Part shown: in pieces, positions 1,979 through 41,115 of the stretch | How the letters are laid out: every line of letters begins with the position of its first letter | How positions within the stretch are numbered: the stretch's first letter is position 1 | NCBI RefSeq assembly: GCF_006345805.1 | Contig: NC_043014.1 | Coordinates: 4,650,001 to 4,714,000 of the forward strand | Length of the DNA: 64,000 bases | Direction: 5' to 3' | DNA from: Octopus sinensis | Taxonomy: Eukaryota | The notes under the pieces: model-generated | Database searches by the model: none | What the model was told of the DNA's origin: nothing | The model's input: only the letters and a program-made list of their open reading frames with translations | Made by a program: the position numbers and the translations under genes

Positions 1979-2478
1979 GTGTGGCTGGTGGACAATTTTA
2001 TTCCCATACTGGTGGAGGAAGTAATCTCTTGTGTCTACCCAACGATCCCATTTGGGCCAATTATACGATAGAAGTTGAAAAAGGTGGTTACATTTATGGC
2101 AGTGAATATCAATTAGATTTATACCCAACGAATAAACTGTTTTCTTTTGCTAACGCTGAATCAATTCATGAGCACAACGTTCCGTGCGCTGTCTGTTTGA
2201 CACGACAACCTGCTGTCGTTATGATGTTACCAGCCAGGACAAAGTGTTACCCTGGTTGGACAGCTGAGTACTCAGGATATTTGATGACCGCACGTCATGA
2301 ACATAAAGGCAGACATGAATATGTGTGTGTGGACTATGCACCAGAAGCTGATCCAGCAGGTTACAGAAACGAAAATGGAGCTTTACTGTATTTCGTTCAG
2401 GCTGCTTGTGGTTCATTGCCATGTCCACCGTATGTCAATGGTCGAGAATTAACCTGTGTTGTGTGCAGTAAACATTGA
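1979..2478 (+). CDS. Gene A, last exon (exon 4): short-chain collagen C4-like / NC1-like domain; upstream exons lie before the window
   Basis: Acceptor ttcaag|GT, 500 nt to TGA. Motifs GGGSNLLCLP, GSEYQ, VPCAVC, CYPGWTAEYSGYLM, CGSLPCPPY, ELTCVVCSK are typical of spongin short-chain-collagen-related proteins. Confidence 0.9.
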
Positions 2479-4134
2479 AAAGGAATTTACATTGGTTTCT
2501 ATATGAAAATTTATGTCGGCGAATTAAAAAATATAATATACTAAAGCAACATATACGTTTCTTGTAATTGTGTTTCGCAGTATTCTAATACAAGTAATAT
2601 ATGTCGTTAAATAAACTGCGGCTACAAGTTTTCAGAAAATATTCAAAACGAAACAACAGAGACGTCATAGAATGTGACAAATAGCTTAACAGAACGATGT
2701 AACCCTCAGGGAATGATTCTAGAATATTTTGTATGAGGTTCAGTTTATCAAATTTAAAATTTGAAATAAAATGATGATTCGTTTAAATGTGTGTTGTATT
2801 CCGTCTTAAAATGAAATCAATCCCCAAAAGAAACACCTCCGTACAAATATATCACCCTTTCATGATCAATCTTCAGAAAACACGATAAAAGCTTATAACT
2901 AACATCACTAAATCATGATGGTTTAATAAAAAAAATACTCCCATACGTATCAATGTAACTACAATCAATGCGATGACAGCACTGCAATCCAATCACGGAT
3001 ATTACCTAATAAAGGATATTTGATATCCACTGAAGAAATACCACAAAATGTTGACTACCTAACTACTTGTCAGGTTACTAACACATTGAAGTTTTCACGA
3101 AACACTTTCGACAAGGGTACAAGTACACGTCCCACGATGAACTACTTTCAACCTACATTCACATATTCCCGCTTTTCTACAAAAATCACACACACACAGC
3201 TTCTTATCGTTCCCTGAAATCTGATGTGCCAAAATAAAATATGAAACCACCAAGAAATATGAGTACACTTCAGGAACAGCATCAACCGAATCTACAGCAA
3301 CACCACAAAACATCAAGTTCAACAAATTATCTCCGTCTGTAACATAAAACTATCAAACTCGCAGAAGAGGAACTTGCTTCGAGATACATGCATACAATAA
3401 CTGTAACAGACATAAACGACTTAGTAATGAAAGGAAGACGACTTATAAAATATACATTAGGTGGAATCAGTGCAACATGTTGAGTCTTTCACACTCTACC
3501 CAGCATGATTGCTCCTTGTATGTGGGAGTTTGTAGAAGGGCTGCCAGATAAACGAAGGTATCCGTGGAAAGAGGGATCTGTGGGTGGCAGCACGTTTTTT
3601 GTCCGATTAATTGCGTGCCATAAGAATGCTCGATTGTGAAAAAGCTAGAGAAAAAGAATAATAATTAAGTAATATGAAAGCACGAAATGCAAATGGACAA
3701 ATGAATATATGGAAACATTCAACATGGCGTTTCCAGTGAACAGTATTAGCGCTCAGTATTAGGCATAAGCAATTTTTAGGTTCGTTAAAATGTGCTAATG
3801 GCATATTTAAAACTCTAAAGGCAAATTCAGTGCAGAAAGCGGCAAAAACAGCATATCGGTCAGGTGCTGCTCCCTATCGGGTTTCAGTTCAGCCGTTATC
3901 AAAAGAAAATACCGAAGAGGGGAATATCTGGACAAACTTAAAGCCATAGCTTTAACTTAAACATAGTCAACAACAACGAGTAAGTGACGCTATTAGAGCG
4001 CAAGGCTGGAGTCTGTCGTGAGTTACCTCCCTTCGGTATTTCTCTTTGATAAATACTTCGCTAGAGGAGTTGATTTCAACCTTGTGCCCCAACAGTAACT
4101 GCGGTCGCTCGTACGGGCCCGCATTTTCCCCGCA

Positions 4135-9044: not shown

Positions 9045-9188
9045 ATGGATTTCGCACAACTGTCCAGGAATATTTCGCAGCGTTATTCCATTTCTTCTCT
9101 CATAGCTTTTGGGGTTCTTCTCGTTCTGACGATCGTGATTCTTCATCAAGATTCAAGAATAGGAAAAATGGAAGAGAAATCAAAAACG
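9045..9188 (+). CDS. Gene B exon 1: N-terminus with hydrophobic signal-anchor (MDFAQ...LIAFGVLLVLTIVIL...SKT)
   Basis: ATG, 48 codons, phase-0 donor ACG|gtaagt. Conserved in all four units. Confidence 0.8.
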
Positions 9189-9614
9189 GTAAGTCATGGA
9201 TTTTGTGTTAATATATGTATGTCTTTATGTATTTATATATGCATGTATGTATGTATGCATTTACGTATGTATGTATTAATATGTGGATGTATGTACGTAC
9301 CGATGGATGGATGAATGTAATGATGTATGCACGAATCACGTACATATGTTCCTATGGAGCACACACACACACACATAAGATCACACACGTAATCACACAC
9401 GAACACACAGGTGCACACACCTAAGCATACATATATATACATATACGTATATTTGTATATATAATATACATATATATATCTAAATATACATATATATGAA
9501 AATGTTAGTGCGTGAACATATATAGATATATATATACAAACATATATCTGCGTGTGTGTATCTATCACTGTATCACTCTGCCTATCTCTCTCTCTCTCTC
9601 TCTCTCTATTTATC

Positions 9615-9651
<37 letters not shown>

Positions 9652-9664
9652 CTGTGTATATAAA

Positions 9665-9850
9665 TATATTCTTTTACCCGTGTCAGTCATTTGACTGCGG
9701 CCATGCTAGAGCACTGCGTTTAGTAGGACGAATCGTTTCAGGAATTATTCTTTGTAAGCCTATTGCTCATTCTCTCGGTATCTCTAGCCGAACCGCTAAA
9801 TAACAGGGACGTAAACACACTGACATCAGTTGAGAATCGATAGTGGTGCA
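9665..9850 (-). mobile_element. 3' half of the same SINE family; paralogous copies at ~24770, ~41135 and ~53815
   Basis: Reverse complement resembles 1540-1700 (CAGTCATTTGACTGCGGCCATGCT). Confidence 0.65.
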
Positions 9851-10041
9851 ACAATAACAGACACACATAAAACATAGATACATACACGCTATGTGTGCTA
9901 TACACACACAGACACACACACACACACATACACACATACATCTATATATATATATATACATATCATATATACATTCACACATATATAGTTACGTATGTAT
10001 GTACATACATATCTATCAATCAATCTATTTGTCTACATATA

Positions 10042-10158
<117 letters not shown>

Positions 10159-10185
10159 GTCCCTGTTTGTATTTTTCTACATATC

Positions 10186-10274
<89 letters not shown>

Positions 10275-10985
10275 ATATATGTATATATGTATACATACAT
10301 ATACACACATCCCAATTAAACAAAAAGAAGGGTGGAATTGTACTCCTGTCCGATCGCTCTTTCACCAGACATAATCCTGGAGAGGGAAATAAGTGCGTAA
10401 TGAAAAAAATCTAATGGTGGGGTTCTAGCATGGCCATGCCCTGTCGCTGCAACTTTTAGCCCTATTAATATTAGTGTTAAGTATTATATCTAGATGTACA
10501 CTTACACACACGCACAGAAACGGACACATACAAACACACACACGCGCACACATAGGAATACGTACATATTTACACACATTTATCTATTTCTCTCCATCGG
10601 GAACGGAAGTGAGGCGAGTTTTTTTGAATCTTTTCTTTCCAACTGAAAATAAAACGTGCGAGTGCCAATGTAGATCGGTGAATTTCGTAATGTTTGACTG
10701 TAATTCACGTTGGTTTTTATATATGACAATACGTAAGAACGAATGTAAATACATACACACAGACACACGGACAAACACACGCACAAATAAACACAAACAC
10801 ACACACATACGCACGCACACAGACACACGTGCTCAATTGTACACGAACAATCACACTATACAGTGTATGTCCACTCACATATATGTGTGCGTTTGTGTGT
10901 GTGTATGCGTATTAGTAGATACGTATACTTTTGATATTTATGGTGTGTATGCTTAAGTATACGTGCATACGTATATATCGATATG

Positions 10986-11058
<73 letters not shown>

Positions 11059-11062
11059 GTGT

Positions 11063-11335
11063 TGAGGAGCAGTGGCCCAGTGGTAAGGGCAACCGACTCA
11101 CGGTTGTAGGATCTCGGTTTCGATTCCCTGACTGGGCGGTGTCTGTTTAAAGCTCCACGACGCTCAGGGAGTGGTTTGTTGTGATCACTGCTGTACTCTT
11201 TCGCTACAACTTTCTCCCTTTCTTCTGTTGGCCTGCTCGCTTAGCCAACGGGGTGGCGTCATTTGAAGGCTGAAACAATGCGAAGCGCATTGTGACCAGC
11301 GATGTGTAGCAACAACTGATAGCCTGGTCAATCAC
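11063..11335 (+). mobile_element. Second tRNA-derived SINE family; copies at 26030-26270, 42431-42700 and 55684-55950
   Basis: GCAGTGGCCCAGTGGTTAGGGCAGCGGACTC...GGTTTCGATTCCC head, conserved 3' GAAGCGCATTGTGACCAGCG. Confidence 0.7.
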
Positions 11336-11517
11336 GGTGATCACGGAGATATATGTATAATACGCACGCAATTCACACACACATACTTCAAACTAGACCT
11401 GTGGTAGAGACAAAAGGAGCCAAGCCCAATTCCTTCTTCTTACCTCTTAAGATTGACAGCCACAACCACACGCACACGCAGACCTCCGCGCACGCTCTTA
11501 TCCACACTTACACACAC

Positions 11518-11803
11518 ATTCCTCCTCCTCTACCACTTTCCTGTCTTTGAAAGAACTTTTCTTCACCCATTTCCTTCCGGTCATTCAAAATGTGCCCGCG
11601 TGTGTACCATTGGCGATTTTTTTTACTCTGTCTTCCCTCCTCTGGATCTTTCCTTCTCGTATGTTTCCGACGAAGAGCTCCACCCGAACGTTAAACCATC
11701 CTTCTTTCCTTCTTTCCTGAACGTCCAATAATACTATATTTGTTCCACGTCCTCGCGTTGTTGTTTTTTTGTGCTTTCTAGTTTGGATTAAATTTAACTA
11801 TGT
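11518..11803 (+). mobile_element. Pyrimidine-rich Penelope-like repeat with decayed minimal HHR (11663-11696)
   Basis: GTTT-CCGACGA-A-GAGCTCCACCC-GAACGT-T-AAAC. Boundaries approximate. Confidence 0.5.
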
Positions 11804-11831
11804 ATATACATATGTGTATATATATATATAT

Positions 11832-12371
11832 ATTCAACAATATAAGGAATGGCCATAATAGGACATTCCACTTACTAGAAAGGGCAGCCAAACTCAAACC
11901 GCTAAATACCCTTATATTTATTAATTAATGATTTTTTGGCTAATTTTGAAATTAAATCAGCAGTTTATATTTGCTGCTGAGAAGACAGCGCGATTGCGGT
12001 AGAATTTTGAAAATTTAGAGCATATGAACTGGAGGCTTCTTTACCATCGCCTCGTGGACTTATACTCGTCCTAGGCTTCTCTGCTGACGAGGCATGCCAG
12101 ATGTAAATAAATTTAATTAATTCGTTTACTAAAGTTTGCCGAAACTATGCATAGTCCGGAGATGAAAGGGGTAAACGTTTTTATTTGTCTTTCTATTTCA
12201 GAAACACAACTATTTAGCGGTGTGAGTTTGGCTGCTCTTTCCAGTCAGTCGAATGTCCTATTATGGCCATTCCTTATATTGTTGAATGTATGGTATATAG
12301 TCTTTGACTATCTTTCCTTTCTCACTAAACCGCTGGTAGCAGAGAATTTTTTGCTACCCTTATATTTATTA

Positions 12372-12373
<2 letters not shown>
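11832..12373 (+). mobile_element. Retrozyme-like insertion: one permuted 448-bp monomer with 19-nt terminal redundancy, plus a 5' inverted 77-bp arm; private to gene B intron 1
   Basis: Direct repeat TACCCTTATATTTATTAAT at 11907-11925 and 12355-12373. 11832-11908 is the reverse complement of 12211-12287 (5 mismatches). Collinear with the 490-bp monomer. Confidence 0.82.
12078..12162 (+). ncRNA. Canonical type I hammerhead ribozyme; predicted cleavage after GTC at 12156
   Basis: Helix I TCTCTG/CGGAGA (one G.U), core CTGACGA, helix II GGCA/TGCC, GAAA, palindromic helix III ACTATGCATAGT, then C17. Confidence 0.92.
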
Positions 12374-12437
<64 letters not shown>

Positions 12438-12439
12438 GT

Positions 12440-12474
<35 letters not shown>

Positions 12475-12476
<2 letters not shown>

Positions 12477-13094
12477 AGCAGACATACCCGGCATTGCTGG
12501 GGATTAAAATGGCAAAGTTGGTATATAGTATATTGCAGTCATTTTGAAACAGGTGATATGGGAAAGTGCAACATTGACAACAAAACATTTGTAGAGTAAA
12601 TGCTGGGCTAATTCGACTAAGCAACATGCTATGCGTCCGTTTGGAGTGTTTCAGACCCTAACCTGTCATGCAAAATTGGAGGTGGGTTTTCTGTGATTTT
12701 TGAACACACAGAAAAGCTGTCAGTGGATATACTCTCCTTTGCAGCAGTGTGCGCTGTGTCTAACACGACCCATCATCGGAAATTTTGACACCTCACGTCG
12801 GGTTTGTTGTCATACATCACTCATAGAGCAAATTTGGAGGAACTGTGGTTGTTCATTCGCAGGTACCAGGGAACCAATGAGGTGATAGACTTGCCCTTGA
12901 ACTTTCACGTCGGCGTAAATTCATGTTTATCTATCTTCTTAGATTCACCAAACGATGTCATTTGAAATGCAGAGTTGTATTGTCTGATATTGTTCAGAAA
13001 ATCCTTTGACCGGATTGAAGCGCCTTCTAGTAAAATTCCTAAGGGGTTGAGATGGTAGTGTTGGCAATGTTAACTGTCCGAATATGTTGTCATC
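12475..13094 (-). mobile_element. Helitron remnant (RepHel N-terminal fragment plus 3' hairpin-CTAG end)
   Basis: Minus-strand translation is of the NIRQYNSAFQMTSFGES type. The 3' end reads CCCAGCAATGCCGGG-8 nt-CTAG. Confidence 0.8.
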
Positions 13095-13174
13095 TATTGC
13101 ATTGTTTTAAGTTCTAAACGATAATAAATACCCTGAAGTTCTATTTATATGATGCTATTTCTATTTTTTCACAG

Positions 13175-13226
13175 AACCGTTTCATCTCCAAGAAATCTCT
13201 CGACGATAAACCTGATGACACACCAA
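13175..13226 (+). CDS. Gene B exon 2 (NRFISKKSLDDKPDDTP, stalk)
   Basis: ttttttcacag|AAC...CCAA|gtaag, 52 nt, phase 0 to 1, which links exons 1 and 3 in frame. Identical in all four units. Confidence 0.78.
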
Positions 13227-13459
13227 GTAAGAACTAATTTTATAGATAAATTCTTTTAACCGCGTCTCCTTAACCAATGATTTATAATTTCACCAACTTT
13301 GAATTAGTTCAACATTACTATCCATATGTCCACAATAATATATACTAAGACACTTGCTTGAATTTATGTTAGACTATGTTCTACTTTACAAGAATTCCCT
13401 AAATATAATGTTATTCTAATATACTATGCCATTTATTGAGTGTATATGAGTATATATGC

Positions 13460-15480
13460 AGTGCTACGTCGAGAATTGTTTCGGTCTGGACGGTTCCACC
13501 GAGTGTGCTCTTCGCCGAGTGTCCGAGGCGGCCGGTATGTTCACTGTGAACAAATTAGAGTGCTCAGAGCGAGCCCCACCGGCTTGCATACGAAAAGCAT
13601 GGAATGCCCTCTTCATCTGAGAATCAAATTCCCGAGCTGGCACTTCACTGCGTTTATATCTACGATTCAGAAGTCTGTCCACTCTTATGTTTCCAATCAT
13701 TCGTGACTAGAGACCCAAAATAATGATGTTCCACTTTCCTACACAGTTAGTATTTGTCAATCCTGCCTTGGGGTACTCGGCAGCCAACCCATTCAGTGCA
13801 TGTTGTTGGTGACCATCAGACGAATCAGGTAGCAGCATGTCGTCTACAAATAACAGTCGACCGATCACGTAGAGATGGATTGGGATACCTCTACGACAAT
13901 GGCTGCGCATATTCAACCAGATCACAAAAAAGAATATGAGAAGGGGCACTAACAATGCACACTTCAACTAAGTGAAACCTTCACGTTGAAAACTTTCGAC
14001 TTTTACATAAATACAAACATTTGAACATCCATATAAGTTCTTTATGGCAACCAGTATTTGCCCATTAAACTCACCTTCAGGGTAAACCATCCACAACATG
14101 CCCAGGACACGTGATCGTGTGAATTTTCGTGGTTTACAGCGTATAAACCTTGGAAATTCTTCAATGTTTGCTGGAATATCTGTCTTTGAATGTCTAAATG
14201 GTCGGGTGTACTGCAACCAGGACAGTAATCTTGGGCGCGACAAATTCCCTACATATCGTTTCCTGACATCTAGAATAGACTTTTCGATAATTAGAACACA
14301 ATTTTTGATCTTTGTTTGAACAAATTTTGATTGTCACCCCATATTACCATTGCCTTGGTGTTTTTCCAGAGGTCCCATCCACCTAGCGTACATGGGTCAC
14401 TCAGAGAATACCATCTGTATTTAAAGCTTCTAAAATATCAAGCCGAACGTGCTTTTCACCTGCAGCTTTATCACTTTTAAGTGAGTTTAGTTCAAATAAG
14501 CATTCAACCGAAGAAGAACCTGACGGAAATAATAATACAATCCATTTCGATGTCCAACTTCATTCAGCGGGGTCACTCTCAATTTGGATGCAAAAGTCTC
14601 CACAATTTTGTTTCTGATCCCAGCATCCACGGCTTACCAATTTCCAGTGTTCGGCAGACTGTAGGAATTTTCAGGTTTTCAGACACAAACGTTCAGCAAA
14701 GAGTGAAAGATGACTGAAATCTATCAGAAACCTCTGTCACCAAGTATTTCTATACCAGGCACCCTTATAAATATCCCTGTCTTAAAATAATATCTTTACC
14801 ATAGAGAGGACAGTGTGTATCCTGCACAGAAGTCTGCTATGACCTGTCCATTAAGTTCACTGACGACATTCCTTCCAATCAACCCTTCTCACGGTTATCA
14901 GTGCCAAGGTGTGCACCGAAGTCTCCTTGCAGGACAAATGACTTTGCCCCAAATATATCTAAAGCTGAGGTGAATTTGCCTAGGAAGGATTTGTATTTGA
15001 CCCAGCTGTTTGCTGCATATACTTTCAACAGCCACAGTGGTCCTTCATATTCAGTCTTAGATTCAAGAGGTGAACCCTCACACCTAGTAGGTTTCACTCC
15101 ATAAAACAATCCGAAAGCTGGGGATTGAGAGTATCCTAATCCCACCTGTGCAGATATTGTTGGCACCACAGTTGCGTTGTGGAGTTTCAAGCCTATATCC
15201 AGGTGTACGCTATCGGAGAAAGGAAATTTTGTAGAGGAGACACCGATTATATCTTACAGGCAGATTATATCTAACAATTTTGACGTTTTAATTCTCAATT
15301 ATTAAAGGTTGTTCCCTTCTTCATCTGCTTTGGTTTCCTGAGACCGTCAATTTTGTGCTCCCACCCCACACACCCCAGATTATGTTGCAGGTTTCTTGAT
15401 TGTTGCACCGGTGTTGGGTGGTGTGTGCTATACATTTATCGACCGGACTCCTTTACTCGAGATCCGGATGCGATGTCTTT
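13460..15480 (-). mobile_element. Decayed RTE-clade LINE (APE endonuclease plus RT fragments)
   Basis: Frameshifted fragments LQGDFGAHLG (APE), QILVAIKNLY and LLFVDD (RT), QHALNGLAAE. Boundaries approximate. Confidence 0.8.
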
Positions 15481-15977
15481 TAACTAAATCGACAAATGAT
15501 GCGGTATGGTTGTTATTTTCATATTGTAGTTATGATGGCCTTATTTGCGCCGAGCTCCAAACTGATATTTGTAGTTGACCGATGAATATTCGCACCTGGC
15601 GAATATTTTATCATTATTCTATTGAGTTTTATCATTATTCTATTGAGAAGTATATATACTCATACCCAAGTTTACGTATCATACATACATCCGTTCATAG
15701 CGGAGACCGATACACATTCTGATATTCTGAGATTAATCTCTCAAATCTTTGACATCAACGTCACCAACAGGCTCAACAGACAAATGTCTTTTTTCTTTCT
15801 TTACAATTTATTCTTATTATTTACATCTTTCGTTCTGACTTTCATTCATTCACTCGTTCTTTCTTAAATTCTATATTTCTCTCTTCTCCATCAATTCCTT
15901 CCCATCCAACAATCTACTTTGTAAATGATCCCCCAATTCTTTCTTTTAAACTACATTATTTCATTTTAATTTCACAG

Positions 15978-16052
15978 AACTCGGTCTCGGATCATTGTAT
16001 ACCCGGTGGGGCAGAACAACTTGTCCTCCTTATTCAAAACTTGTATATGACG
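15978..16052 (+). CDS. Gene B exon 3 (KLGLGSLYTRWGRTTCPPYSKLVYDG, start of C4-like domain)
   Basis: ttcacag|AA...GACG|gttagt, 75 nt, phase 1 to 1. YxRWGRTTCP..LVYxG is the usual N-terminal motif of this domain. Confidence 0.9.
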
Positions 16053-17453
16053 GTTAGTATACTTTATATTTCTGACCTCTCATTCTCTTTTTATTTTTTT
16101 CTTGTTCTCTTTTTATACCTCTCATTCTCTCTTTTTGTTGCCTCTCTTTCTCTCGCACCCTCTCTCTCACGCACATGCACACACACTCACCCTGTGTCGG
16201 GTTGTCTGACATAAACATTCTCAAATCCTCTTATGATATGTCACGTTTGAAACGTCTATACCTGTAGACTATACAGACACTACATAAGACTGCTTACTCC
16301 TTTGTAGGTATTTGGTCAAATCAGAATATTATATGTTGTCTACTACGGACCAAGTGAAAAGGATGTTGTCTAACTACAGAATATAGATATCTCTACGTTA
16401 AATTATAGACAGGGGCTGGACTGAAAACCACCTAGGCGATCAAGATTTTCAGGCTGACCAGCTTTGGATTGTAGATATGAAATACCGAGAGTGCTAACTG
16501 GTGATCAATTGTACAGGCTACGGATGGTGGTATTGTACGTGAGTAACCAGAGTTGAAATGTGGCCACTTGACTATCTTTAACTAGAGTGCCCAATGATCG
16601 TAGGTGTGGGCTAAATTGAATAGAGTCTATTAGAATTGATGACAGTGACTGTAAATGGTTAATGGAATGAACGCATAATGTAGAATGAGGACTGGACAAG
16701 CCACATACTGTAACTGATGGAAAAAGCTAAGGACTTTATTCATTAAGTAAAATAGAGAGAGACTAAATATTAGTGAGAGAACACAACAGAGTACAGAATG
16801 CACTTCTATTCTTCTCCACCTCACCGACATCGTCCTATCGCTGAAACCTTGCTCTTTTCATGCACCACATCACCTCATTAATTATCCAGTATATCTTTGT
16901 AAGGTAATTCCGAAACTTGCGATTCAAAACTGCTGCTACAAACCTCTTCCCCAATCAACCTCACAATCCCTAAAAATGCTCTGAATCTGCTCTCTGTAAA
17001 CCCTACACGTATCCTTTTTCGGTCGCCCACTCCGCCGTCCATTCATCTTAAGCACTACGCCATCACTGAACCTCACAATTTTTCCTCCCACCTCGTTTCT
17101 GTGTATTGCATGAAAACAAGTCTGTGTGATCATAATGTCTATGTAAGCCTGATTCGTCCGAGTCTAAACGAGAGGTTTAGCCACTGACTCTCGTATGATC
17201 GACTAAACAACATTTCATCGACGGTTACCCACCACTTCTCTGCATCTCGTCGTCTCCCGTATTGTCCTACTCAAACCTCCTACAATTTCCACCACCCAAA
17301 ATATACCCATTCACACGTGAACATCTTTACCATTTCGGATAAACACGAGTGCATGCGTTATAAAATATCTTTCTTTTTCTCCATCAATATATATAATTGG
17401 ATTTGCATGAAACAAGCATACCGCATTACATCTGGAGATCCTTGATGCTTCTT

Positions 17454-17597
<144 letters not shown>

Positions 17598-17816
17598 GTA
17601 CATATGATGACAAGGCAAATGCACAGCTACGTTCTCAAGCATTCAGCAACACACAGCTTACACTTACATAAACACTAACATATATACACCACAATTCGTT
17701 CACACGCGACTAAACATGACTCCTTTTAACGGTCAATTTGTAATGAATATTTCCGTTATTTCATATATAATTTTGCTTAACATCTTTTTTACTTGATTTA
17801 TTCTTACCAATTCTAG

Positions 17817-18316
17817 GTGTGGCTGGTGGACAACTTTATAGCCATACTGGTGGCGGAAGTAATCTCTTGTGTCTACCTAACGACCCCATTTGGGCCAATT
17901 ATACGACAGGAGATACAAAAAGTGCTTACATTTATGGCAGTGAATATCAACTGGAACACTACCCAACAAATAAACTCTTTTCTTTTGCTAACGCTGAATC
18001 AATTCATGATCACAACGTTCCGTGCGCTGTCTGTTTGACACGACAACCTGCTGTTGTTATGATGTTACCAGCCAGGACAAAGTGTTACCCTGGTTGGACA
18101 GCTGAATATTCAGGATATTTGATGGCAGAACATTATGCTCATAAGGGCAGACATGAATATGTGTGTGTGGACTATGCACCAGAAGCTGATCCAGCGGGTT
18201 ACAGAAACGAAGATGGAGCTCTACTGTATTTCGTTCAGGCTGCTTGTGGTTCATTGCCATGTCCACCGTATGTCAGTGTTCGAGAATTAACCTGCATTGT
18301 GTGCAGTAAATATTGA
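17817..18316 (+). CDS. Gene B exon 4; the spliced CDS is 771 nt (256 aa)
   Basis: ttctag|GT acceptor, open frame to TGA, same motifs as gene A. Confidence 0.9.
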
Positions 18317-21300: not shown

Positions 21301-24132
21301 GTTGTTGTTGTTAATGTTGTTGTTGTCCAGCCCTCACGAAAGCCTAATCGAACAGGTCTATGATCGAAGACATCCAGTCGTGACCAACCCATCTTTTATT
21401 CAGTAACGTTTATATAAAAATAACAGCCAAAAGTTGGCTGGTAGGCAGGTTGGCTGGTTGGTGGTGGATCGGTTGGTCATGACTGGTTTGTCGGTTGGTT
21501 GCTGGCTGGTTGGTCTGTGGGTCACCTGGTTGGCTGGTTTGTCGGTTGGTAGGGGATCGGCTGGTTGGTTGGTTTGTCGGTTGGTTGCTGGTTGGCTGGT
21601 TTGTCGGTTGGTTGCTGGCTGGCTGGTTGGTCTGTGGGTCACCTGGTTGGCTGGTTTGTCTGTTGGTGGTGGATCGGTTGGTCATGACTGGTTTGTCGGT
21701 TGGTTGCTGGCTGGCTGGTTGGTCTGTGGGTCACCTGGTTGGCTGGTTTGTCGGTTGGTGGTGGATCGGTTGGTCATGACTGGTTTGTCGGTTGGTTGCT
21801 GGCTGGCTGGTTGGTCTGTGGGTCACCTGGTTGGCTGGTTTGTCGGTTGGTAGGGGATCGGCTGGTTGGTTGGTTTGTCGGTTGGTTGCTGGTTGGCTGG
21901 TTTGTCGGTGGGTCACCTGGTTGGTTGGTTTGTTGGTTGGTCGTGGATCGATCGGTTGGTTTGTGTCATGCGCGGTAACATAGAAATAATCGGACTGAAA
22001 ACCAGATCGGGCGGTTAATCCATTGGGAGTGGAGGACTCCTAGACTTTGTTAGGGCATCCTTCTAGGAGAAGGTAACTCAGGTAACTGGGATAACTCCGA
22101 TATAAGCCTGCGGCTCAGTGGTTACCGATAATGTTGACTTGTTCTTCTTTTCGGATTATGGCTGCTGTTGCTTAGTGACTGGGATTGACACAGTGCACAG
22201 CCTTTCCTCACTATAAAAAAAATCTTCATGCACAGACATTGCAAGATAACAACATTAATTAAGCGTCGTGCAATGCCCATACTCGATAACGAGGGGGCAG
22301 CCACCGAGTATGTACTTATGAATGGATGGATGGATGGATGTAAGTATGTATGCATGTATGTATGGATGTAAGTATGTATGTATGTATATATGTATGTATG
22401 TATGTATGTGTATAGGGTCTATCGATATATACATGCTTACATTCAAACATACATGCATGTATACATGTATACATACATACTTGTATGTATAAATATATGC
22501 ATACATGTATGTATGTATGTATGTATGAAAGTATGTATGTATGTATGTACGTATGTATGTGTGTGTATGTATGTATGTTTGTATGTATGTATGTGTGTAT
22601 GTATGTGTGTATGTATGTATATATATATGTGTGTGATTGTAAGTATATATGTATGTATGGGGGTATATATGTATGTATATACGTGAGTGTGTATGTATGC
22701 ATGTATGTATGTATGTGTGTATGTATGTATGTTTGTATGTATACCTGTATGTATGTGTGCATGTATGTATGTATATATGTATGTATGTAAATATGTATGT
22801 ATAAATATATGCATACATGTATGTATGTATGTATGTATGTATGTATGTATGTATGTATGTATGTATGTATATTTGTATGTATATACGTGAGTGTGTATGT
22901 ATGCATGCATGCATGTATGTATGTATGTATGTATGTATGTATGTATATATGTAAGTATGTGTGTATGTATGTGTGTATGTATGTATGTGTGTATGTATGT
23001 ATATATGTATGTATGGGTGGGTGGGAATTGGTAGGTTTTGACTTTGATATTCACATAAAACTTTTCTAATCCGATTAACGCTTGTTGTGAAGAATCCAAT
23101 CCGAACAGCGGACTTCATTAGATTAAGTCTTGCGATTACTGTGTGGGTTGAACGAAATACTTCCCACTCTGGATATTAAAACAGTGTGTGAGTGTGTGTG
23201 TGTGTGTGTGTTTCGGTGTGTGTGTGTGTGTGTGTGTTTCGGTGTGTGTGTGTGTGTGTCAGTGTATGTGTGCGTGTGGGAGTGTGTGTGTGTGTGTCAG
23301 TGTATGTGTCAGTGTATGTGTGTGTGTAAGTGTATGTGTGTGTGTCAGTGTATGTGCGTGTGTGTGTCAGCGTGTGTGTGTGTGTGTCAGTGTGTCTGTG
23401 TCAATGTGTATGTCTGTGCGTGAGTGTGTGTGTGTGTGTAAGACAATGTATCTGTGTGTGTGTGTCAGTGTGTGTGTCAGTGTGTGTTGGTGTGTGTGGG
23501 TGTGTGTTGGGGTGTGTGTATGTCAGTATGTGTGTGTGTGTTAGTGTGTGTGCGTGTGTGTGTCTGTGTGTCAGTGTGTGTAGGTGTGTATGTTGGTGTT
23601 TGTGTCAGTGTGTGCTTGTGTGTGCGTGTCAGTGTGTGTGTGTCAGTGTCTGTGTGTGTGTCCGTCCGTGTGTGTTTGCGTGTCAGTGTGTGTGTATGCG
23701 TGTGTGTCTGTGTATTTGTTGGTTGAACGAAATACTTCCCACACTGAATATTAAAACAGTTTCCCAAGAATAAACAAATAAAATTAAATAACAACATTAG
23801 TAACTAAATATATCATAATATATCCAGAAACAGGAATCATTTCACTTTACACGTGTCTCTCATTCATCAAAATATTTTGCTAATTATTGTGTGACAATAT
23901 CAAACCATCTCTTTCCAATAATTAAACCTGTCAGACAAGTTCACACCCGCTTTTACAGTTCCACCAATCGCATTGGTTCATAAATTTACGATAAGATCTA
24001 TGCCAGAGCTGGGTTGTTGTGCGCTCAATAACTAAGTGGAATTCAGTTACAGGTCTTCAGCTTAAACCTCGCATCTCGATCTTTTGTTGAAGCCACACGA
24101 AGTATCACGTACGACCGACAACTGTCACCAGA

Positions 24133-24276
24133 ATGGATTTCGCACAACTGTCCAGGAATATTTCGCAGCGTTATTCCATTTCTTCTCTCATAGCTTTTGG
24201 GGTTCTTCTCGTTCTGACGATCGTGATTCTTCATCAAGATTCTAGAATAGGAAAAATGGAAGAGAAATCGGAAACG
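24133..24276 (+). CDS. Gene C exon 1 (signal-anchor)
   Basis: ATG to ACG|gtaagt, paralogous to 9045-9188. Confidence 0.8.
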
Positions 24277-24713
24277 GTAAGTCATGGATTTTGTGTTAAT
24301 ATATGTATGTCTTTATGTATTTATATATGCATGTATGTATGTATGCATTTACGTATGTATGTATTAATATGTGGATGTATGTACGTACGGATGGATGGAT
24401 GAATGTAAGGATGTATGCATGAATCACTTACATATGTTCCTATGGAGCACACACACACACACATAAGATCACACACGTAATCACACACGAACACACAGGC
24501 GCACACACTAAACATACATATATATACATATACGTATATTTGTATATATAATATACATATATATGTATATATAAATATACATATATATGAATATATTAGT
24601 GCGTGAACATATATAGATATATATATATACAAGCAAATATATGTGTGTGTGTATCTATCACTGTATCTCTGTCTATCTTTCTCTCTCTCTATTTATCTAT
24701 ATATATATGTATG

Positions 24714-24744
<31 letters not shown>

Positions 24745-25125
24745 TTGTTTGTATATATATATAATCTTTTAACCGTTTCAGTCATTTGACTGCGGCCATG
24801 CTAGAGCACTGCGTTTAGTAGGACAAATCGACTTCAGGAATTATTCTTTGTAAGCCTATTGCTCATTCTATCGTTATCTCTAGCCGAACCGCTATGTAAC
24901 GGGGATGTAAACACACCGACATCAGTTGAGAATCGATAGTGGTGCGACAATATCAGACACATACATAAAACATAGATACATGCACACTATGTGTGCTATA
25001 CACACACACACACACACACACACATACATCTATATATATATATATACATATCATATATACATACACACATATATAATTACGTATGTATGTTCATACATAT
25101 CTATCAATCAATCTATTTATCTACA

Positions 25126-25181
<56 letters not shown>

Positions 25182-25207
25182 CATTCTAGCTATCTATCTA
25201 TCTATCT

Positions 25208-25312
<105 letters not shown>

Positions 25313-27274
25313 CATATACACACATCCCAGTAAACACAAAGAAGGGTGGAATTGTACTCCTGTCCGATCGCTCTTCCACCAGACATAATCCTGGAGGGGG
25401 AAATAAGTGCGTATTGAAAAAAATCTAATGGTGGGGTTCCAGCATGGCCATGCCCTGTCGCTGCAACGTTTAGCCCTATTAATATTAGTGTTGAGTATTA
25501 TATCTAGATGTACACTTACACACAGGCACAGAAACAGACACATGCAAACACACACACACGCACACATTGGAATACGTACATATTTACACACATTTATCTA
25601 TTTCTCTCCATCAGGAAAGGAAGTGAGGCGAGTTTTTTTGAATCTTTTCTTTCCAACTGAAAATAAAACGTGCGAGTGCCAATGTAGATCGGTGAATTTC
25701 GTAATGTTTGACTGTAATTCACGTTGGTTTTTATATATGACAATATGTAAGAACGAATGTAAATACATACACACAGACACACGGACAAACACACGCACAA
25801 ATAAACACAAACACACACACATACGCACGCACACAGACACACGTGCTCAATTGTACACGAACAATCACACTATACAGTGTATGTCCACTCACATATATGT
25901 GTGCGTTTGTGTGTGTGTGTGCGTATAAGTAGATTCGTAAATTTGTGATATTTATGGTGTGTAAGCCTAAGTATACTTGTATACCTATATATTGATATGT
26001 ATTTATATATATATATATATATGTCTGTGTGGAGGCGCAGTGGCCCAGTGGTTAGGGCAGCGGACTCACGGTTCCGATACCCAGACTGGGTGTTGTGTGT
26101 GTTTAAATCACCACGACGCTCAGGGAGCGGGTTGTTGTGATCACTCTTTCGCTATATCTTTCTCCCTTTCTTCTTAGCCAGCAGGGTGGCGTCATTTGAA
26201 GGCTAAATCAATGCGAAGCGCATTGTGACCAGCGATATGTAGCAACAACTGATAGCCTGGTCTGTAACAGTGATCACAGAAATATATGTATCATACGCAC
26301 ACAATACACACACACATACACACGTATATACACACTCACCAGCACAGATGCCCACATATACATTTTACGATACTCATGCAGATACGCACACACTTATACA
26401 CACATGGGCACAGACACACACGCACATACACGTACTTAAGTGCACACACGCACACAAGCACACGCACGCACATTACACCCACACAACTCCAAAAAACCCC
26501 ACACACGCATGCACAAATTCACATACACACCGATACATATACATACACGCAATATATGCCTACACGCGCACACACACTTACGTATACACATATAGATACA
26601 TACACACAGACGCACGCAAAAACATGCGCACACATAAGCACGCACACACGCCCACGAATGCACACATCGAAAACTCACAACCCCACGGATACACGTACAT
26701 ACACCCATATACACTTACACACTCACATACAAACGCACACGTACATGCACACACATCTACACGCTCATACGACACGCACGCACACACACACACACACAAA
26801 TGAACTCGCACATACATCCCATACACACGGCACACAATTATACATACACGAACACAATTATAGATACATGTATACACACATACGCACGTACAAGCACACA
26901 CGCACACATACGCTAAGTAAAGCACAGTTATTCGCCACACACCCAGACTCGACGCATACACACACAAACACACATACATACACAGAAACACTACAAAAAA
27001 AACACACACACGATACATATACATACACGCACACACACACATACTTCAAACTAGCAGTACCTACTACTTGACCTGTGGTAGAGACAAAAGGAGCCACGCC
27101 CAATTCCTTCGTTGACCTTATCACTACTAGCCCTACAATACGCAAAGAATAACAGCCACAACCACACACGCATACACACACACACACAAACGTGTCATCA
27201 TTGCACACATACACACATACACACACACGGACATGCAGACCTCCGCAAACGCACATGTCGACACTTACACACAC

Positions 27275-27558
27275 ATTCCTCCTCCTCTACCACTCTCCTG
27301 TCTTTGAAAGAACTTTTCTTCACCCATTTCCTTCCCGACATTCAAAATGTGACCGCGTGTGTACCGTTGGCGAGTTTTTTCCTCTGTTTTCCCTCCTCTG
27401 GATCTTTCCTCGTCGTATGTTTCCGACCAAGAGCTCCGCTCGAAACGTTGATCGCTCCTTCTTTCCTTCTTTCTTGAGCGTCTAATAATACTATATTTGT
27501 TCCACGTCCTCACGTGGCTGTGTTCTTTGTGCTTTCTTGTTTGGATTAAATTTAAGTA
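27275..27558 (+). mobile_element. Paralogous Penelope-like repeat; HHR remnant at 27419-27449
   Basis: Helix II GAGC-TCC-GCTC intact, followed by GAAACGT. Confidence 0.5.
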
Positions 27559-27582
27559 TATATATACATGTGTATATATATA

Positions 27583-27681
<99 letters not shown>

Positions 27682-27763
27682 AAGATATAGATATAGATAT
27701 ATATATATGTAGAAATATGTGTGTGTATATGTGTATGTGTGTGTGTGTGTGTGTGTGTGTTTA

Positions 27764-28385
27764 CTAGCAGAAATACCCGGCATTGCTGGGGACTACAATG
27801 GCAAAGTTGGTATATAATATATTCCACTCATTTTGAAACAGGTGATATGGGAATGTGCAACATTGACAACAAAGCATTTGTAGAGTAAATGCTGGGCTAA
27901 TTCGACTAAGCAACATGCTATGCGTCCGTTTGGAGTGTTTCAGGCCCTAACCTTTCATGCAAAATTGGAGGTGGGGTTTGTGTGATTTTTGAACGCACCA
28001 AAAAGCTGTCAGTGGATATACTCTCCTTTGCAGCAGTGTGCGCTGTGTCTAACACGACCCATCATCGGAAATTTTGACACCTCACGTCGGGTTTGTTGTC
28101 CTACATCTCTCATAGAGTAAATTTGGAGGAACTGTGGTTGTTCATTCGCGGGTACCAGAGAACCAATGAGGGGATAGACTTGCCCTTGAACTTTGACGTC
28201 GGCGTAAATTCATGTTTATCTTTCTTCTTAGTTTCACCAAACGATGTCATTTGAAATTCAGATTTTTATTGTCTGATATTGTTCAGAAAATCCTTTGACT
28301 GGAGGGAAGCTCCTTCTAGAAGATTCCTAAGGGGTTGAGATGGTAGTGTTGGCAATGTTACCTGTCCGAATATGTTGTCATCTAT
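27764..28385 (-). mobile_element. Helitron remnant (paralog)
   Basis: Collinear with 12475-13094. Confidence 0.78.
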
Positions 28386-28462
28386 TGCATTGTTTTAAGT
28401 TCTAAACGATAATAAATACCCTGAAGTTCTATTTATATGATGCTATTTCTATTTTTTCACAG

Positions 28463-28514
28463 AACCGTTTCATCTCCAAGAAATCTCTCGACGATAAACC
28501 TGATGACACACCAA
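28463..28514 (+). CDS. Gene C exon 2
   Basis: AG/GT-bounded 52-nt exon identical to gene B exon 2. Confidence 0.78.
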
Positions 28515-28759
28515 GTAAGAACTAATTTTATGGCTAAAGTCTTTTACCCGTGTCTCCTTAACCAATGATTTATAATTTCACCAACATTGAATTAGTTCCA
28601 CATTACTATCCATATGTCCACAATAATATATACTAAGACACTTGCCTGAATTTATTTCAAACTATATTGTACTTTACAATAATTTCCTGAATAAAATGCT
28701 TTTATATACTATGCCATTTATTGTGTGTATATGAGTATATATGCAGTGCTACGTCGATA

Positions 28760-30700: not shown

Positions 30701-31203
30701 GTCTTTTAACTAAATCGACAAATGATGCGGTATGGTTGTTATTTTCATATTGTAATTTATGATGGCCTTATTTGCGCCGAGCTCCAAACTGATATTTGTA
30801 ATTGACCGATGAATATTCGCACCTGGCGAATATTTAATCATTATTCTATTGATTTTTATCATTATTCGATTGAGAAGTATATATACTCATACCCAAGTTT
30901 ACGTATCATACATACACCCTTTCAAAGCGGAGACCGATACACATTCTGATATTCTGAGATTAATCTCTCAAATCTTTGACATCAACGTCAACAACAGGCT
31001 CAACGGACAAATGTCTTTTTTCTTTCTTTACAAATTATTGTTATTATTTACATTTTCGTTCTGACTTTCATTCATTCACTCGTTCTTTCTTTAATTCTAT
31101 ATTTCTCTCTTCTCCATCAATTCCTTCCCATCCAACATCCTACTTTGTAAATGATCCCCCAATTCTTTCTTTTAAACTACTTTATTTCATTTTAATTTCA
31201 CAG

Positions 31204-31278
31204 AACCCGGTCTCGGATCATTGTATACCCGGTGGGGCAGAACAACTTGTCCTCCTTATTCAAAACTTGTATATGACG
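31204..31278 (+). CDS. Gene C exon 3 (KPGLGSLYTRWGRTTCPPYSKLVYDG)
   Basis: cag|AA...GACG|gttagt, 75 nt. Confidence 0.9.
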
Positions 31279-32464: not shown

Positions 32465-32536
<72 letters not shown>

Positions 32537-32539
32537 ATT

Positions 32540-33479
32540 CAGATGAATATGGTACTTAAGTTGAGGCTCCAGAATTTAGTACGACATTATCCATACAATT
32601 TCAAATTAAGGTGATTAAAATTAAAATAAGCAACGATGATAACCAGAGATAATGCAGTACGTTCGTTTCATCCAACTCCAGTTAATTGAACAATGCAATG
32701 ATTACATCAGTTTAAAATTTAGAGCAATCCTCGGCTGCTAAAAGACGTAGGATTTAATTAAATTAGAACAGATGGACACATATGTATAATTATACCTAAA
32801 ATCCCCAAGAAATTACATAGAACATGTTGTCTCTACTTCAGCAAAGCAGTTACTAAAATTATCAAGAAGACTCAGGTTGCCACGGATTTTTTGTCTTTAT
32901 GGGGTCAGTTTTAATTGTTTACAAATCCTTTGTATATCTAAGGCAGAGAGAACATAGGGCAGTATATGTTAGGGGGAGGGCTGAGCGAGTAGATAGACAT
33001 TCTAGTTGGTATAGTCATAAAAAAATCAAGAATTATTATAAACAATACCATGAGGTTTAGTAAGGGAACACTTGAAACAAGATGTTAGATGATAATTAAG
33101 GGGGTCGCACACTGGCAGACTATTGACAATGAAACGGAATATCTTATCATATATTATAGTTAAATATTTTAAACAATGTTGCTATGAATACAGTTGAAGT
33201 TTAAGGTTTTCCAAAGGAGTATGAAGAAGAATATTATAACAACAGGATAGAAATTGTTGAATACATTTTGTATTCATAAGTATTCATAAATTTCTTGATA
33301 ATTTTAGTAAATTCTATTTTAGTAACAATCTGTTTTAATTTAAGTAAATCCTACGTATTTGTGCAGCTGAAGATTCCTCTATATTTTAAATTGATGTGAT
33401 TATTGTATTGTTCAATTAAATGGAGTTGCATGAAACAATTGTACTGCATTATCTCTGGAAATCCTTGTTGCTTACTTCG

Positions 33480-33480: not shown

Positions 33481-33513
<33 letters not shown>

Positions 33514-41069: not shown

Positions 41070-41115
<46 letters not shown>

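What the first reader, a model, noticed from the sequence alone, without database searches (positions are those of the whole stretch)
1979..2478. Clustered hypervariability in exon 4 across four paralogs: a diversifying receptor/lectin-like array
Seen: the exon-4 peptides of A-D (165 aa) differ at 15-23 positions in the pairs counted, while exon 2 is nucleotide-identical and exons 1 and 3 differ by at most a residue or two. Changes cluster at residues 6-8 (F/L/H/W at 6), 30-39 (IEVEKGGYIY / TGDTKSAYIY / SNVEDGCWIH / TEVEKGGYIH), 46-49 (DLYP/EHYP/EFYQ/QYYP), 103-112 (TARHEHKGRH / AEHYAHKGRH / AGQYKEKGRL / ASHHAEKGRQ) and 130-135. Many are multi-nucleotide codon changes. Ten cysteines and the NYT sequon are invariant. 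Inference: positive selection on a composite binding surface, as in immune, allorecognition or adhesion repertoires.
Basis: partly seen in the sequence, partly recalled or inferred. Interest (0 to 1): 0.72.

Follow-up and report, generated by a model that had tools for sequence, protein, structure and literature searches.

The report
Octopus gene array with hypervariable loops
The window holds part of a large tandem array of octopus genes for small membrane-anchored proteins whose front end is nearly identical between copies while three or four loops of the head domain (related to the end domain of collagen IV) differ sharply; this looks like a recognition repertoire, but proof of positive selection is weaker than the standard test suggests.

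Summary
Window 1979-2478 is the last exon (165 codons plus TGA) of one copy in a ~16-kb tandem array of octopus 'short-chain collagen C4-like' genes. There are four exon-4 copies (A-D) and four sets of exons 1-3 (genes B-E). Exon-4 peptides differ at 15-27 sites, and the differences cluster (permutation p=0.002). Exon 2 is nucleotide-identical. Exon 4 has nine invariant cysteines, not ten.

The proteins have a short N-terminal tail, a membrane-anchor helix, a stalk with no Gly-X-Y repeats, and a spongin-type domain related to collagen IV NC1.

On 25 copies from three genomes, M1a/M2a and M7/M8 are strongly positive (LRT 104 and 112, omega about 3.5). This result is not robust. Silent-site diversity varies about 10-fold along the exon. 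Gene conversion is evident (PHI p=0.001). Models that allow site-rate variation leave an equivocal signal: p=0.0016 on one tree, not significant on segment trees.

Replacement divergence in the clusters (0.30-0.59) still far exceeds intron (0.07-0.09) and four-fold-site (0.10-0.19) divergence.

Best reading: a constant-stem, variable-head recognition family diversified in loops and reshuffled by gene conversion. Neutral loops that escape conversion remain a live rival.

The parts
1979..2478 (+). Gene A, exon 4 (last exon: 165 codons + TGA). Encodes most of the Cys-rich NC1-like head domain. Exons 1-3 of gene A lie upstream of the window.
1996..2004 (+). Hypervariable residues 6-8 of exon 4 (copy A coordinates).
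2068..2127 (+). Hypervariable residues 30-39 and 46-49. This is the nucleotide divergence peak (mean pairwise p about 0.24 among A-D).
2287..2316 (+). Hypervariable residues 103-112, a predicted hairpin loop after the long strand. Second divergence peak (p about 0.19).
2368..2385 (+). Weaker variable patch, residues 130-135. Not picked by M2a or M8.
2609..2614 (+). AATAAA 131 nt after the stop codon; candidate polyadenylation signal. Read from the sequence only.
9045..18316 (+). Gene B, complete 256-aa ORF. Exon 1 CDS 9045-9188, exon 2 13175-13226, exon 3 15978-16052, exon 4 17817-18316. All introns are GT-AG.
24133..34221 (+). Gene C, complete 256-aa ORF. Exons 24133-24276, 28463-28514, 31204-31278, 33722-34221. 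Extra Cys at hypervariable residue 36.
40488..50263 (+). Gene D, complete 256-aa ORF. Exons 40488-40631, 44881-44932, 47494-47568, 49764-50263.
53133..63704 (+). Gene E, exons 1-3 only: 53133-53276, 57939-57990, 63630-63704. Exon 4 lies beyond the window end.
23701..24276 (+). Example of the near-constant promoter plus exon 1 block. Pairwise p is 0.007-0.035 within the window. An 844-bp block around exon 1 is about 89-98% identical to window copy D in 19 of 21 copies across three genomes.

Best explanation
The window is a slice of a large, head-to-tail array of octopus genes from the spongin short-chain-collagen family (NCBI name 'short-chain collagen C4-like').

Shown: each gene makes a 256-residue protein. 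Exons 1-3 encode a constant part: a 15-residue N-terminal tail, one hydrophobic helix and a charged stalk with no collagen repeats. The end of exon 3 plus exon 4 encode a ~190-residue, ten-cysteine, N-glycosylated head related to the NC1 end domain of collagen IV. The head core is under strong purifying selection (omega about 0.05-0.18). Three to four predicted loops (residues 6-8, 30-49, 103-112, and less so 130-135) take almost any residue while keeping their length.

Shown: loop sequences are reassorted between paralogs by short-tract gene conversion, giving mosaics. Silent sites in the variable codons are also about twice as diverged as elsewhere in the exon. The promoter and exons 1-3 stay nearly identical among copies and species.

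Inferred: the array is a germline repertoire of constant-stem, variable-head recognition proteins. They are probably displayed as type II membrane proteins, possibly as oligomers, because relatives carry a collagen helix or a coiled coil in place of the stalk. Selection would favour or at least preserve loop diversity, while conversion and purifying selection hold the scaffold constant.

The ligand and the tissue are unknown.
For: Anatomy. Four or five units with intact ORFs and GT-AG introns. AlphaFold2 model of the O. vulgaris paralog P0008: pLDDT 86.9, helix 16-51, beta-rich residues 72-255.

Family. 408 homologs were found; the best are Octopus 'short-chain collagen C4-like' at E=1e-104. 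Relatives carry Gly-X-Y repeats (amphioxus, soft coral) or a coiled coil (bivalves) before the same domain.

NC1 link. Foldseek's top 19 PDB hits are all collagen IV NC1 (probability 0.97-1.0). hhalign against human alpha1(IV) NC1 gives E=6.8e-5 over the CAVC...C.GW...GY motif. The literature describes seven Cys shared with collagen IV plus three spongin-specific Cys (PMC5395295).

Array size. Copies span 11.08-11.70 Mb of O. vulgaris OX597833.1 and 3.97-6.55 Mb of O. sinensis CM016876.1. I extracted 21 further intact exon-4 copies and one frameshifted pseudogene.

Diversity. Clustering p=0.002. Exon 4 is more diverged (p 0.08-0.13) than the introns (0.05-0.09), the 3' flank (0.03-0.09) or the promoter (0.02-0.035). 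dN in the clusters is 0.30-0.59, against 0.007-0.027 in the rest of the exon. M2a and M8 LRTs are 104 and 112. 27 of 31 variable sites lie in loops. The 25 copies show almost no length variation at residues 30-39 and 103-112.

Conversion. PHI p=0.001 on all informative sites and 0.043 on silent sites. Max-chi-square pairs give p=0.002-0.006. Trees of the two exon halves are incongruent.
Against: Positive selection is not robustly shown. With site-rate variation allowed, the LRT drops to 17.45 on one tree (p=0.0016) and to 0.89 and 2.52 on segment trees. Local omega is 0.80-0.82 for the clusters. Cross-species nearest pairs give omega about 1 or lower.

The codon models are my own implementation. 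They use an NJ topology and M0 branch lengths that are only rescaled for the site models.

The fold link to NC1 rests on Foldseek E-values with TM-scores of only about 0.2. An exon-4-only model found no PDB match. Pfam has no model for the domain.

Membrane topology, oligomer state, a single binding face, expression and ligand are all untested. Bivalve papers link family members to gill expression or to shell formation, not to recognition.
Confidence: 0.55

Rival explanations
1. Neutral loops that escaped gene conversion. The loops are simply unconstrained (omega = 1). The scaffold and flanks are kept alike by purifying selection and by conversion between neighbouring copies. Once the loops drift far enough apart they become poor substrates for conversion, so they and the silent sites next to them keep diverging. 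No adaptive diversification is needed.
For: Local omega in the clusters is 0.80-0.82, not different from 1. Omega is about 1.05 or 0.49 in cross-species nearest pairs. The dual-rate null model explains most of the M2a/M8 signal. Silent diversity is about twice as high in variable codons (0.36 against 0.18) and varies about 10-fold by block along the exon. Silent changes in nearest pairs are three times more frequent in variable codons (p=0.018). Conversion is detected.
Against: The full-alignment dual model still prefers a class with omega = 2.4 (p=0.0016). The 11 M8 sites give local omega 1.93 (p=0.005), though they were chosen post hoc. The loops keep their length across 25 copies despite near-saturated residue turnover. 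Dozens of intact copies are retained and only one frameshifted pseudogene was seen. The variable motifs recur in new combinations across species.
Confidence: 0.3
2. A structural or secreted matrix protein family (spongin-like; cuticle, egg case, ink or mucus component) in which the loops tolerate change because they have no specific partner. The array would exist for dosage.
For: The family name and its history are structural: spongin exoskeleton and collagen IV relatives. A peptide of another O. vulgaris family member was found in the ink proteome. Oyster literature ties a member to shell formation.
Against: There is no collagen repeat and no Pfam collagen hit in the octopus proteins. The N-terminal hydrophobic helix, about 19 residues starting at residue 16, looks like a membrane anchor rather than a cleaved signal peptide (inference). 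A dosage array would be expected to stay homogeneous in the coding exon, but exon 4 is the most diverged aligned part of the unit.
Confidence: 0.12
3. An artefact: collapsed or mis-assembled repeats, or decaying pseudogenes whose differences are errors or decay.
For: The window contains a near-perfect palindrome at 61425-63249 that could be an assembly artefact. The O. vulgaris array holds one frameshifted copy.
Against: All four exon-4 copies and all three complete genes are open, with canonical splice sites. The rest of the exon shows omega 0.04-0.18. The same variable positions and motifs recur in two independently assembled genomes. A 1.1-kb RNA-derived contig encodes an uninterrupted 283-aa relative.
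Confidence: 0.03

Closest known systems
Spongin short-chain collagens / 'short-chain collagen C4' (first described in the sponge Ephydatia; family defined by Aouacheria et al. 2006, as cited in PMC5395295)
   Same: The C-terminal Cys-rich domain is the same (hits at E=1e-44 to 1e-104; ten-cysteine pattern). The taxonomic spread is the same: cnidarians, annelids, molluscs, amphioxus.
   Different: The octopus genes have no Gly-X-Y collagen segment. They carry an N-terminal membrane-anchor-like helix and a charged stalk instead. They sit in a very large tandem array with hypervariable loops. The papers I could search report none of this for the family.
Collagen IV NC1 domain (PDB 1LI1, 1M3D; Pfam C4)
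   Same: Shared motif CAVC...(P)C(P)xGW...GY and terminal CxVC. Foldseek probability 0.97-1.0 for 19 NC1 chains. hhalign E=6.8e-5.
   Different: No Pfam C4 hit, no HSQ motif, ten Cys rather than twelve, and about 190 residues rather than about 230. TM-score is only about 0.2, and the exon-4-only model gives no hit. It is not attached to a long triple helix.
Expanded invertebrate recognition families with an oligomerising stem and a variable globular head (bivalve C1q-domain proteins, snail FREPs). An analogy from my own knowledge, not tested here.
   Same: Tandem expansion, a conserved scaffold with variable loops, and collagen or coiled-coil stems among relatives.
   Different: The fold is unrelated. 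No immune expression or binding data exist for the octopus genes.
Vertebrate MHC peptide-binding exons and KIR/Ly49-type arrays. An analogy from my own knowledge.
   Same: Diversity is concentrated in one exon. Both silent and replacement divergence are raised there. Inter-locus gene conversion makes mosaics. The rest of the gene is nearly constant.
   Different: Here the diversity seen is between paralogs; allelic polymorphism was not examined. Omega above 1 is not robustly shown.

Membership tests
Spongin short-chain collagen (SSCC) family | C-terminal NC1-like domain with the spongin cysteine pattern (seven Cys shared with collagen IV plus three spongin-specific) | tested here: met
   Ten conserved Cys: one in exon 3 and nine in exon 4. 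Best database hits carry this family name. The pattern is described in PMC5395295.
Spongin short-chain collagen (SSCC) family | Short collagenous Gly-X-Y segment before the domain | tested here: not met
   There is no Gly-X-Y run in the 256-aa proteins. P0008 has no Pfam Collagen hit, while the amphioxus relative P0074 has one at E=3.7e-9. The genes are therefore SSCC-related, not short-chain collagens in the strict sense.
Spongin short-chain collagen (SSCC) family | Secreted extracellular matrix protein | not testable with these tools
   The N-terminus looks like an uncleaved signal anchor: hydrophobic residues 16-34, within a predicted helix 16-51. Topology needs an experiment.
Collagen IV NC1 (Pfam C4, PF01413) | Match to the Pfam C4 model | tested here: not met
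   No Pfam hit at E up to 10 for the exon-4 peptide, P0008 or the relatives tested. A profile search of PDB sequences finds no NC1 chain.
Collagen IV NC1 (Pfam C4, PF01413) | NC1 fold | tested here: inconclusive
   For the full-length model the top 19 Foldseek hits are all NC1 (E=2e-5 to 1.4e-2; 17 at E<=0.001), but with TM about 0.2 and rmsd about 17 A. The exon-4-only model gives no hit. hhalign probability is 63.5% over 52 columns.
Collagen IV NC1 (Pfam C4, PF01413) | Two homologous subdomains with 12 Cys and HSQ motifs, at the end of a long triple helix | tested here: not met
   Ten Cys, no HSQ motif and no triple helix. This agrees with what PMC5395295 reports for spongins.
Diversifying recognition repertoire (functional class, not a homology family) | Tandem multigene array with variation concentrated in exposed loops of a conserved scaffold | tested here: met
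Diversifying recognition repertoire (functional class, not a homology family) | dN/dS above 1 at the variable sites | tested here: inconclusive
   M2a and M8 say yes. The dual-rate model gives p=0.0016 on the full alignment but is not significant on segment trees. Local omega is 0.8 for the clusters and 1.9 for the 11 sites chosen post hoc. Nearest cross-species pairs give about 1.
Diversifying recognition repertoire (functional class, not a homology family) | Variable residues form one exposed face; paralog-specific ligand binding; expression in immune, sensory or barrier cells | not testable with these tools
   The structure tool returns no coordinates. There are no expression data. The literature search found only an ink-proteome peptide from another paralog.

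The most novel reading that the evidence does not exclude
Octopuses carry a previously undescribed germline repertoire of dozens of type II membrane receptors. These are built on the collagen IV NC1 / spongin fold and have lost the collagen helix. Their three to four hypervariable loops are diversified under selection and reshuffled as cassettes between paralogs by gene conversion. They serve non-self or chemical recognition (immune, symbiont, prey or mate). This would be a new scaffold for a variable receptor family, in a lineage with few known expanded immune receptors.
Probability: 0.3. Interest if true: 0.75.

Novelty: new variant of a known kind. Interest (0 to 1): 0.45.

Why it matters
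The spongin-type NC1-like domain is widespread in invertebrates. It has no Pfam model and no known function beyond 'collagen-like'.

If the octopus array is a recognition repertoire, a domain known only as the assembly end of basement-membrane collagen would also serve as a variable binding head. Cephalopods would gain a candidate diversified receptor family. The array would also be a clean natural example of a constant stem held uniform while one exon stays diverse in the same 16-kb repeat.

There is a methodological lesson too. The standard M7/M8 test gives a spectacular false sense of certainty here (LRT 112), because silent rates vary along the exon and the copies are mosaics.

Tried and rejected
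- Pfam scans of the exon-4 peptide and of full-length relatives found no model for the domain.
- A profile search of PDB sequences gave only a spurious RING-ligase hit at E=0.31.
- An AlphaFold2 model of the exon-4 peptide alone (pLDDT 81.8; the five models ranged 51-82) gave no PDB fold match. It did not sharpen the NC1 comparison.
I therefore modelled the O. vulgaris paralog P0008, which is 95% identical to copy B in exon 4.
- I first thought silent divergence in exon 4 exceeded that of the introns. Four-fold sites are 21.7% segregating against 14-16% in introns 1 and 2, which is not significant (p=0.13 and 0.29). They are higher only than the 3' flank and the promoter. I dropped that claim.
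- I looked for species-wise clustering of promoter/exon-1 sequences, the signature of concerted evolution. The tree is a star with no species structure, so the block is simply very conserved or widely homogenised.
- The per-codon correlation of silent diversity with distance to the nearest variable codon is null (rho=0.02). Only a block-level pattern is visible.
- A parsimony count of N against S changes at the 11 selected codons is not different from neutral (p=0.21).
- One combined segment run timed out and was redone.
- The tRNA scan found nothing.
- ORFs of 160 aa or more outside the genes all lie in microsatellites.
- Literature searches found no paper on these octopus genes beyond one ink-proteome peptide. 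Aouacheria et al. 2006 is not held in the library.

Full report
**What is at the coordinates**

The window is AT-rich animal DNA (GC about 0.39) with microsatellites and interspersed repeats. Positions 1979-2478 follow an AG acceptor. In the frame set by a split glycine codon they read 165 codons and a TGA stop. The same exon recurs on the + strand at 17817, 33722 and 49764, at 88.8-91.8% nucleotide identity. A self-comparison shows head-to-tail repeat units of about 16 kb.

A protein search with the peptide found 408 homologs. The best are Octopus sinensis and O. vulgaris proteins that NCBI names 'short-chain collagen C4-like' (E=1e-104, up to 92% identity). Mapping a full-length O. vulgaris protein onto the window gave four-exon genes with GT-AG introns:
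- Gene A contributes exon 4 only.
- Genes B, C and D are complete 256-codon ORFs.
- Gene E contributes exons 1-3 only.

No copy in the window is identical to any copy I retrieved from O. vulgaris or O. sinensis. The N-terminal exons match those two species rather than O. bimaculoides. The source is therefore an octopus of the vulgaris group.

**Check of the observation**

- The four exon-4 peptides differ at 15-27 positions, and 32 of 165 positions vary.
Clustering along the exon beats 20,000 permutations (p=0.002).
- The quoted peptide strings, the invariant NYT sequon and the frequent two- and three-base codon changes are all correct.
- Exon 2 is identical in all four copies. Exons 1 and 3 differ by one or two residues at most.
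- One detail is wrong. Exon 4 has nine invariant cysteines. The tenth conserved cysteine lies in exon 3, and copy C has an extra cysteine at variable residue 36.

**What the protein is**

The deduced protein has four parts:
- a 15-residue N-terminal tail;
- a hydrophobic stretch of about 19 residues;
- a charged stalk of about 35 residues with no Gly-X-Y repeats;
- a cysteine-rich head of about 190 residues.

An AlphaFold2 model of the O. vulgaris paralog P0008 (95% identical to copy B in exon 4) has mean pLDDT 86.9. It shows one long helix over residues 16-51 and a beta-rich domain over residues 72-255. I read the helix as a type II membrane anchor; this is an inference.

Pfam has no model for the head domain. 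Relatives in amphioxus and a soft coral carry collagen repeats in front of the same domain. Bivalve relatives carry a signal peptide and a coiled coil there. The family therefore usually mounts this head on an oligomerising stem.

The literature defines spongin short-chain collagens as a short collagen segment plus an NC1-like domain. That domain shares seven cysteines with collagen IV NC1 and has three of its own (PMC5395295). The ten cysteines found here fit that pattern.

My own tests of the NC1 link are supportive but not clean:
- Foldseek's top 19 PDB hits for the full-length model are all collagen IV NC1 (probability 0.97-1.0), but TM-scores are near 0.2.
- hhalign of the family profile against human alpha1(IV) NC1 gives E=6.8e-5 over 52 columns around the CAVC...C.GW...GY motif. 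I checked that the NC1 sequence I used is identical to PDB chain 1LI1_A.
- A model of exon 4 alone found no PDB match.

**Size of the family**

I fetched eight loci around database proteins. In O. vulgaris, copies lie between 11.08 and 11.70 Mb of OX597833.1. In O. sinensis they lie between 3.97 and 6.55 Mb of CM016876.1. From these loci I extracted 21 more intact exon-4 copies, one frameshifted pseudogene and one degenerate remnant. The same positions are variable in all of them. A 1.1-kb contig from an RNA-seq run encodes an uninterrupted 283-residue relative, so at least some family members are transcribed.

**Divergence along the repeat unit**

Pairwise p-distances among the four units in the window:

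| Region | Pairwise p-distance |
|---|---|
| Exon 4 | 0.08-0.13 |
| Introns | 0.05-0.09 |
| 3' flank | 0.03-0.09 |
| Intergenic DNA | about 0.025 |
| Promoter | 0.02-0.035 |
| Exon 1 | 0.007-0.028 |
| Exon 2 | 0 |

Within exon 4 there are two peaks: p about 0.24 at codons 30-49 and about 0.19 at codons 90-110. The valleys between them are at 0.02-0.04.

Four-fold sites of invariant codons diverge by 0.10-0.19. That is like the introns (21.7% against 14-16% segregating sites; not significant) but higher than the 3' flank and the promoter.

An 844-bp block spanning the promoter, exon 1 and the start of intron 1 is mostly 93-98% identical to window copy D in 19 of 21 copies from three genomes. 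It forms a star tree with no species structure.

**Tests of selection**

I wrote a Goldman-Yang type codon likelihood (F3x4 frequencies, NJ topology, branch lengths fitted under M0 and then rescaled). I applied it to 25 exon-4 copies. All tests below are this implementation, not PAML or HyPhy.

| Test | Result |
|---|---|
| M0 | omega 0.41 |
| M1a vs M2a | LRT 103.8; omega 3.8 on 5.2% of sites |
| M7 vs M8 | LRT 111.7; omega 3.5 on 5.5% of sites |
| M1a vs M2a, codons 1-60, own tree | LRT 36.2 |
| M1a vs M2a, codons 101-166, own tree | LRT 19.1 |

M2a and M8 pick the same 11 sites: 6, 8, 34, 37, 46, 47, 88, 103, 104, 107 and 112.

A parsimony count then showed that silent changes are also in excess at the selected codons. 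The local N:S ratio there is no different from neutral (p=0.21). I therefore fitted models with three site-rate classes crossed with the omega classes.

| Dual-rate test | Result |
|---|---|
| Null (no omega>1) vs M2a, fit | lnL -3937.8 vs -4003.6 |
| Adding omega>1, full alignment | LRT 17.45, 4 df, p=0.0016; omega 2.4 |
| Adding omega>1, codons 1-60, own tree | LRT 0.89 |
| Adding omega>1, codons 101-166, own tree | LRT 2.52 |

Fitting each codon set with its own silent rate:

| Codon set | omega | Comment |
|---|---|---|
| 31 highest-entropy codons | 0.82 | not different from 1 |
| 11 M8 sites | 1.93 | p=0.005, but chosen post hoc |
| Remaining 135 codons | 0.18 | strong constraint |

Three cross-species nearest pairs were analysed with variable codons defined on the other 19 copies. 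They give replacement divergence of 0.060 in variable codons, against silent divergence of 0.057 overall and 0.124 locally.

That is three to six times the intron or four-fold-site divergence. In the rest of the exon it is 0.007-0.027.

**Mosaic structure**

- Silent diversity varies about 10-fold between 10-codon blocks. It is twice as high in variable codons as in conserved ones.
- In nearest pairs, silent changes are three times more frequent in variable codons (p=0.018).
- The PHI test rejects clonality (p=0.001 on all informative sites; 0.043 on sites in invariant codons).
- Several pairs have significant max-chi-square breakpoints.
- Trees of the two exon halves disagree, and loop motifs recur in different combinations across copies and species.

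This is the pattern expected from short-tract gene conversion between paralogs.

**Structure mapping**

27 of the 31 high-entropy sites lie in predicted loops, against 76 of the other 134 sites (p=0.0017). Residues 103-112 form the turn after the longest strand. Residues 30-49 span a long loop of somewhat lower confidence. Loop lengths are almost fixed across the 25 copies. The tools give no coordinates, so I could not test whether the loops form one face.

**Conclusion**

- The anatomy is secure.
- The scaffold is strongly constrained. The loops change at least as fast as local silent sites and much faster than any neutral yardstick outside them.
- The loops are reshuffled by gene conversion.
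- Whether selection drives the loop changes (omega above 1) is not settled. The classical tests say yes. Tests that allow silent-rate variation and separate trees say 'perhaps, at a few sites'.
- I favour a constant-stem, variable-head recognition repertoire (confidence 0.55). The main rival is neutral loops that have escaped conversion (0.30).
- The function is inferred from architecture alone. The only published hints for the family are gill expression in mussels, a link to shell formation in oysters, and an ink-proteome peptide in octopus.

Noticed in passing
window 61425-63249 (intron 2 of gene E): A nested set of near-perfect inverted repeats: arms of 206-618 nt, 98-100% complementary, one pair with no spacer. 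This is either a foldback element or an assembly artefact. Together with about 3.5 kb of extra sequence it makes intron 2 of gene E 5.6 kb, against 2.7 kb in genes B-D.
   Followed up: partly
window 4139-4670, 7194-7946, 8116-8625 (and the matching places in each unit): Long degenerate microsatellites, (TG)n, (TGTA)n and (GT)n, fill the intergenic region upstream of each exon 1 and give it a strong GC skew. Tracts like these could promote unequal exchange or conversion in the array; I did not test this.
   Followed up: partly
window about 1300-1713, and 60931-61424: An insertion of about 410 bp, flanked by (TA)n, sits just upstream of exon 4 in copy A only. It is 89% identical to a segment in intron 2 of gene E, so it is probably a short interspersed repeat. 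ARAGORN finds no tRNA in it.
   Followed up: partly
window 8546-9390, 23632-24478, 39988-40831, 52632-53529; L001-L008: An 844-bp block (promoter, exon 1 and the start of intron 1) is mostly 93-98% identical to window copy D in 19 of 21 copies from three genomes. The exceptions are window copy E at 89% and two divergent copies at 71-75%. The tree is a star with no grouping by species. This is far more uniform than the introns (5-9% divergence).
   Followed up: yes
window 14125-14232, 15244-15396 (intron 2 of gene B) and the matching places in C, D and E: Exon-like stretches match the alternative N-termini of several O. sinensis RefSeq models (for example P0009). They are open in gene B but carry stop codons in C and D. 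Those alternative N-termini may be annotation artefacts or decayed alternative first exons.
   Followed up: no
exon 4 residue 36 of copy C (window 33829-33831); residue 35 in L001:3134, L006:49737, L008:34191 and L008:67984: An extra, eleventh cysteine recurs inside the first hypervariable loop in several paralogs. It gives an odd cysteine count, so a free thiol or an intermolecular disulfide is possible.
   Followed up: no
L003:5162-5654; L004:22049-22243: The O. vulgaris array holds an exon-4 pseudogene with frameshifts and a degenerate exon-4 remnant. The family therefore loses copies as well as gaining them.
   Followed up: partly
family-wide (P0008, P0026, P0074, P0084, P0100): The spongin-type NC1-like domain has no Pfam-A model, despite hundreds of homologs across several animal phyla.
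   Followed up: yes
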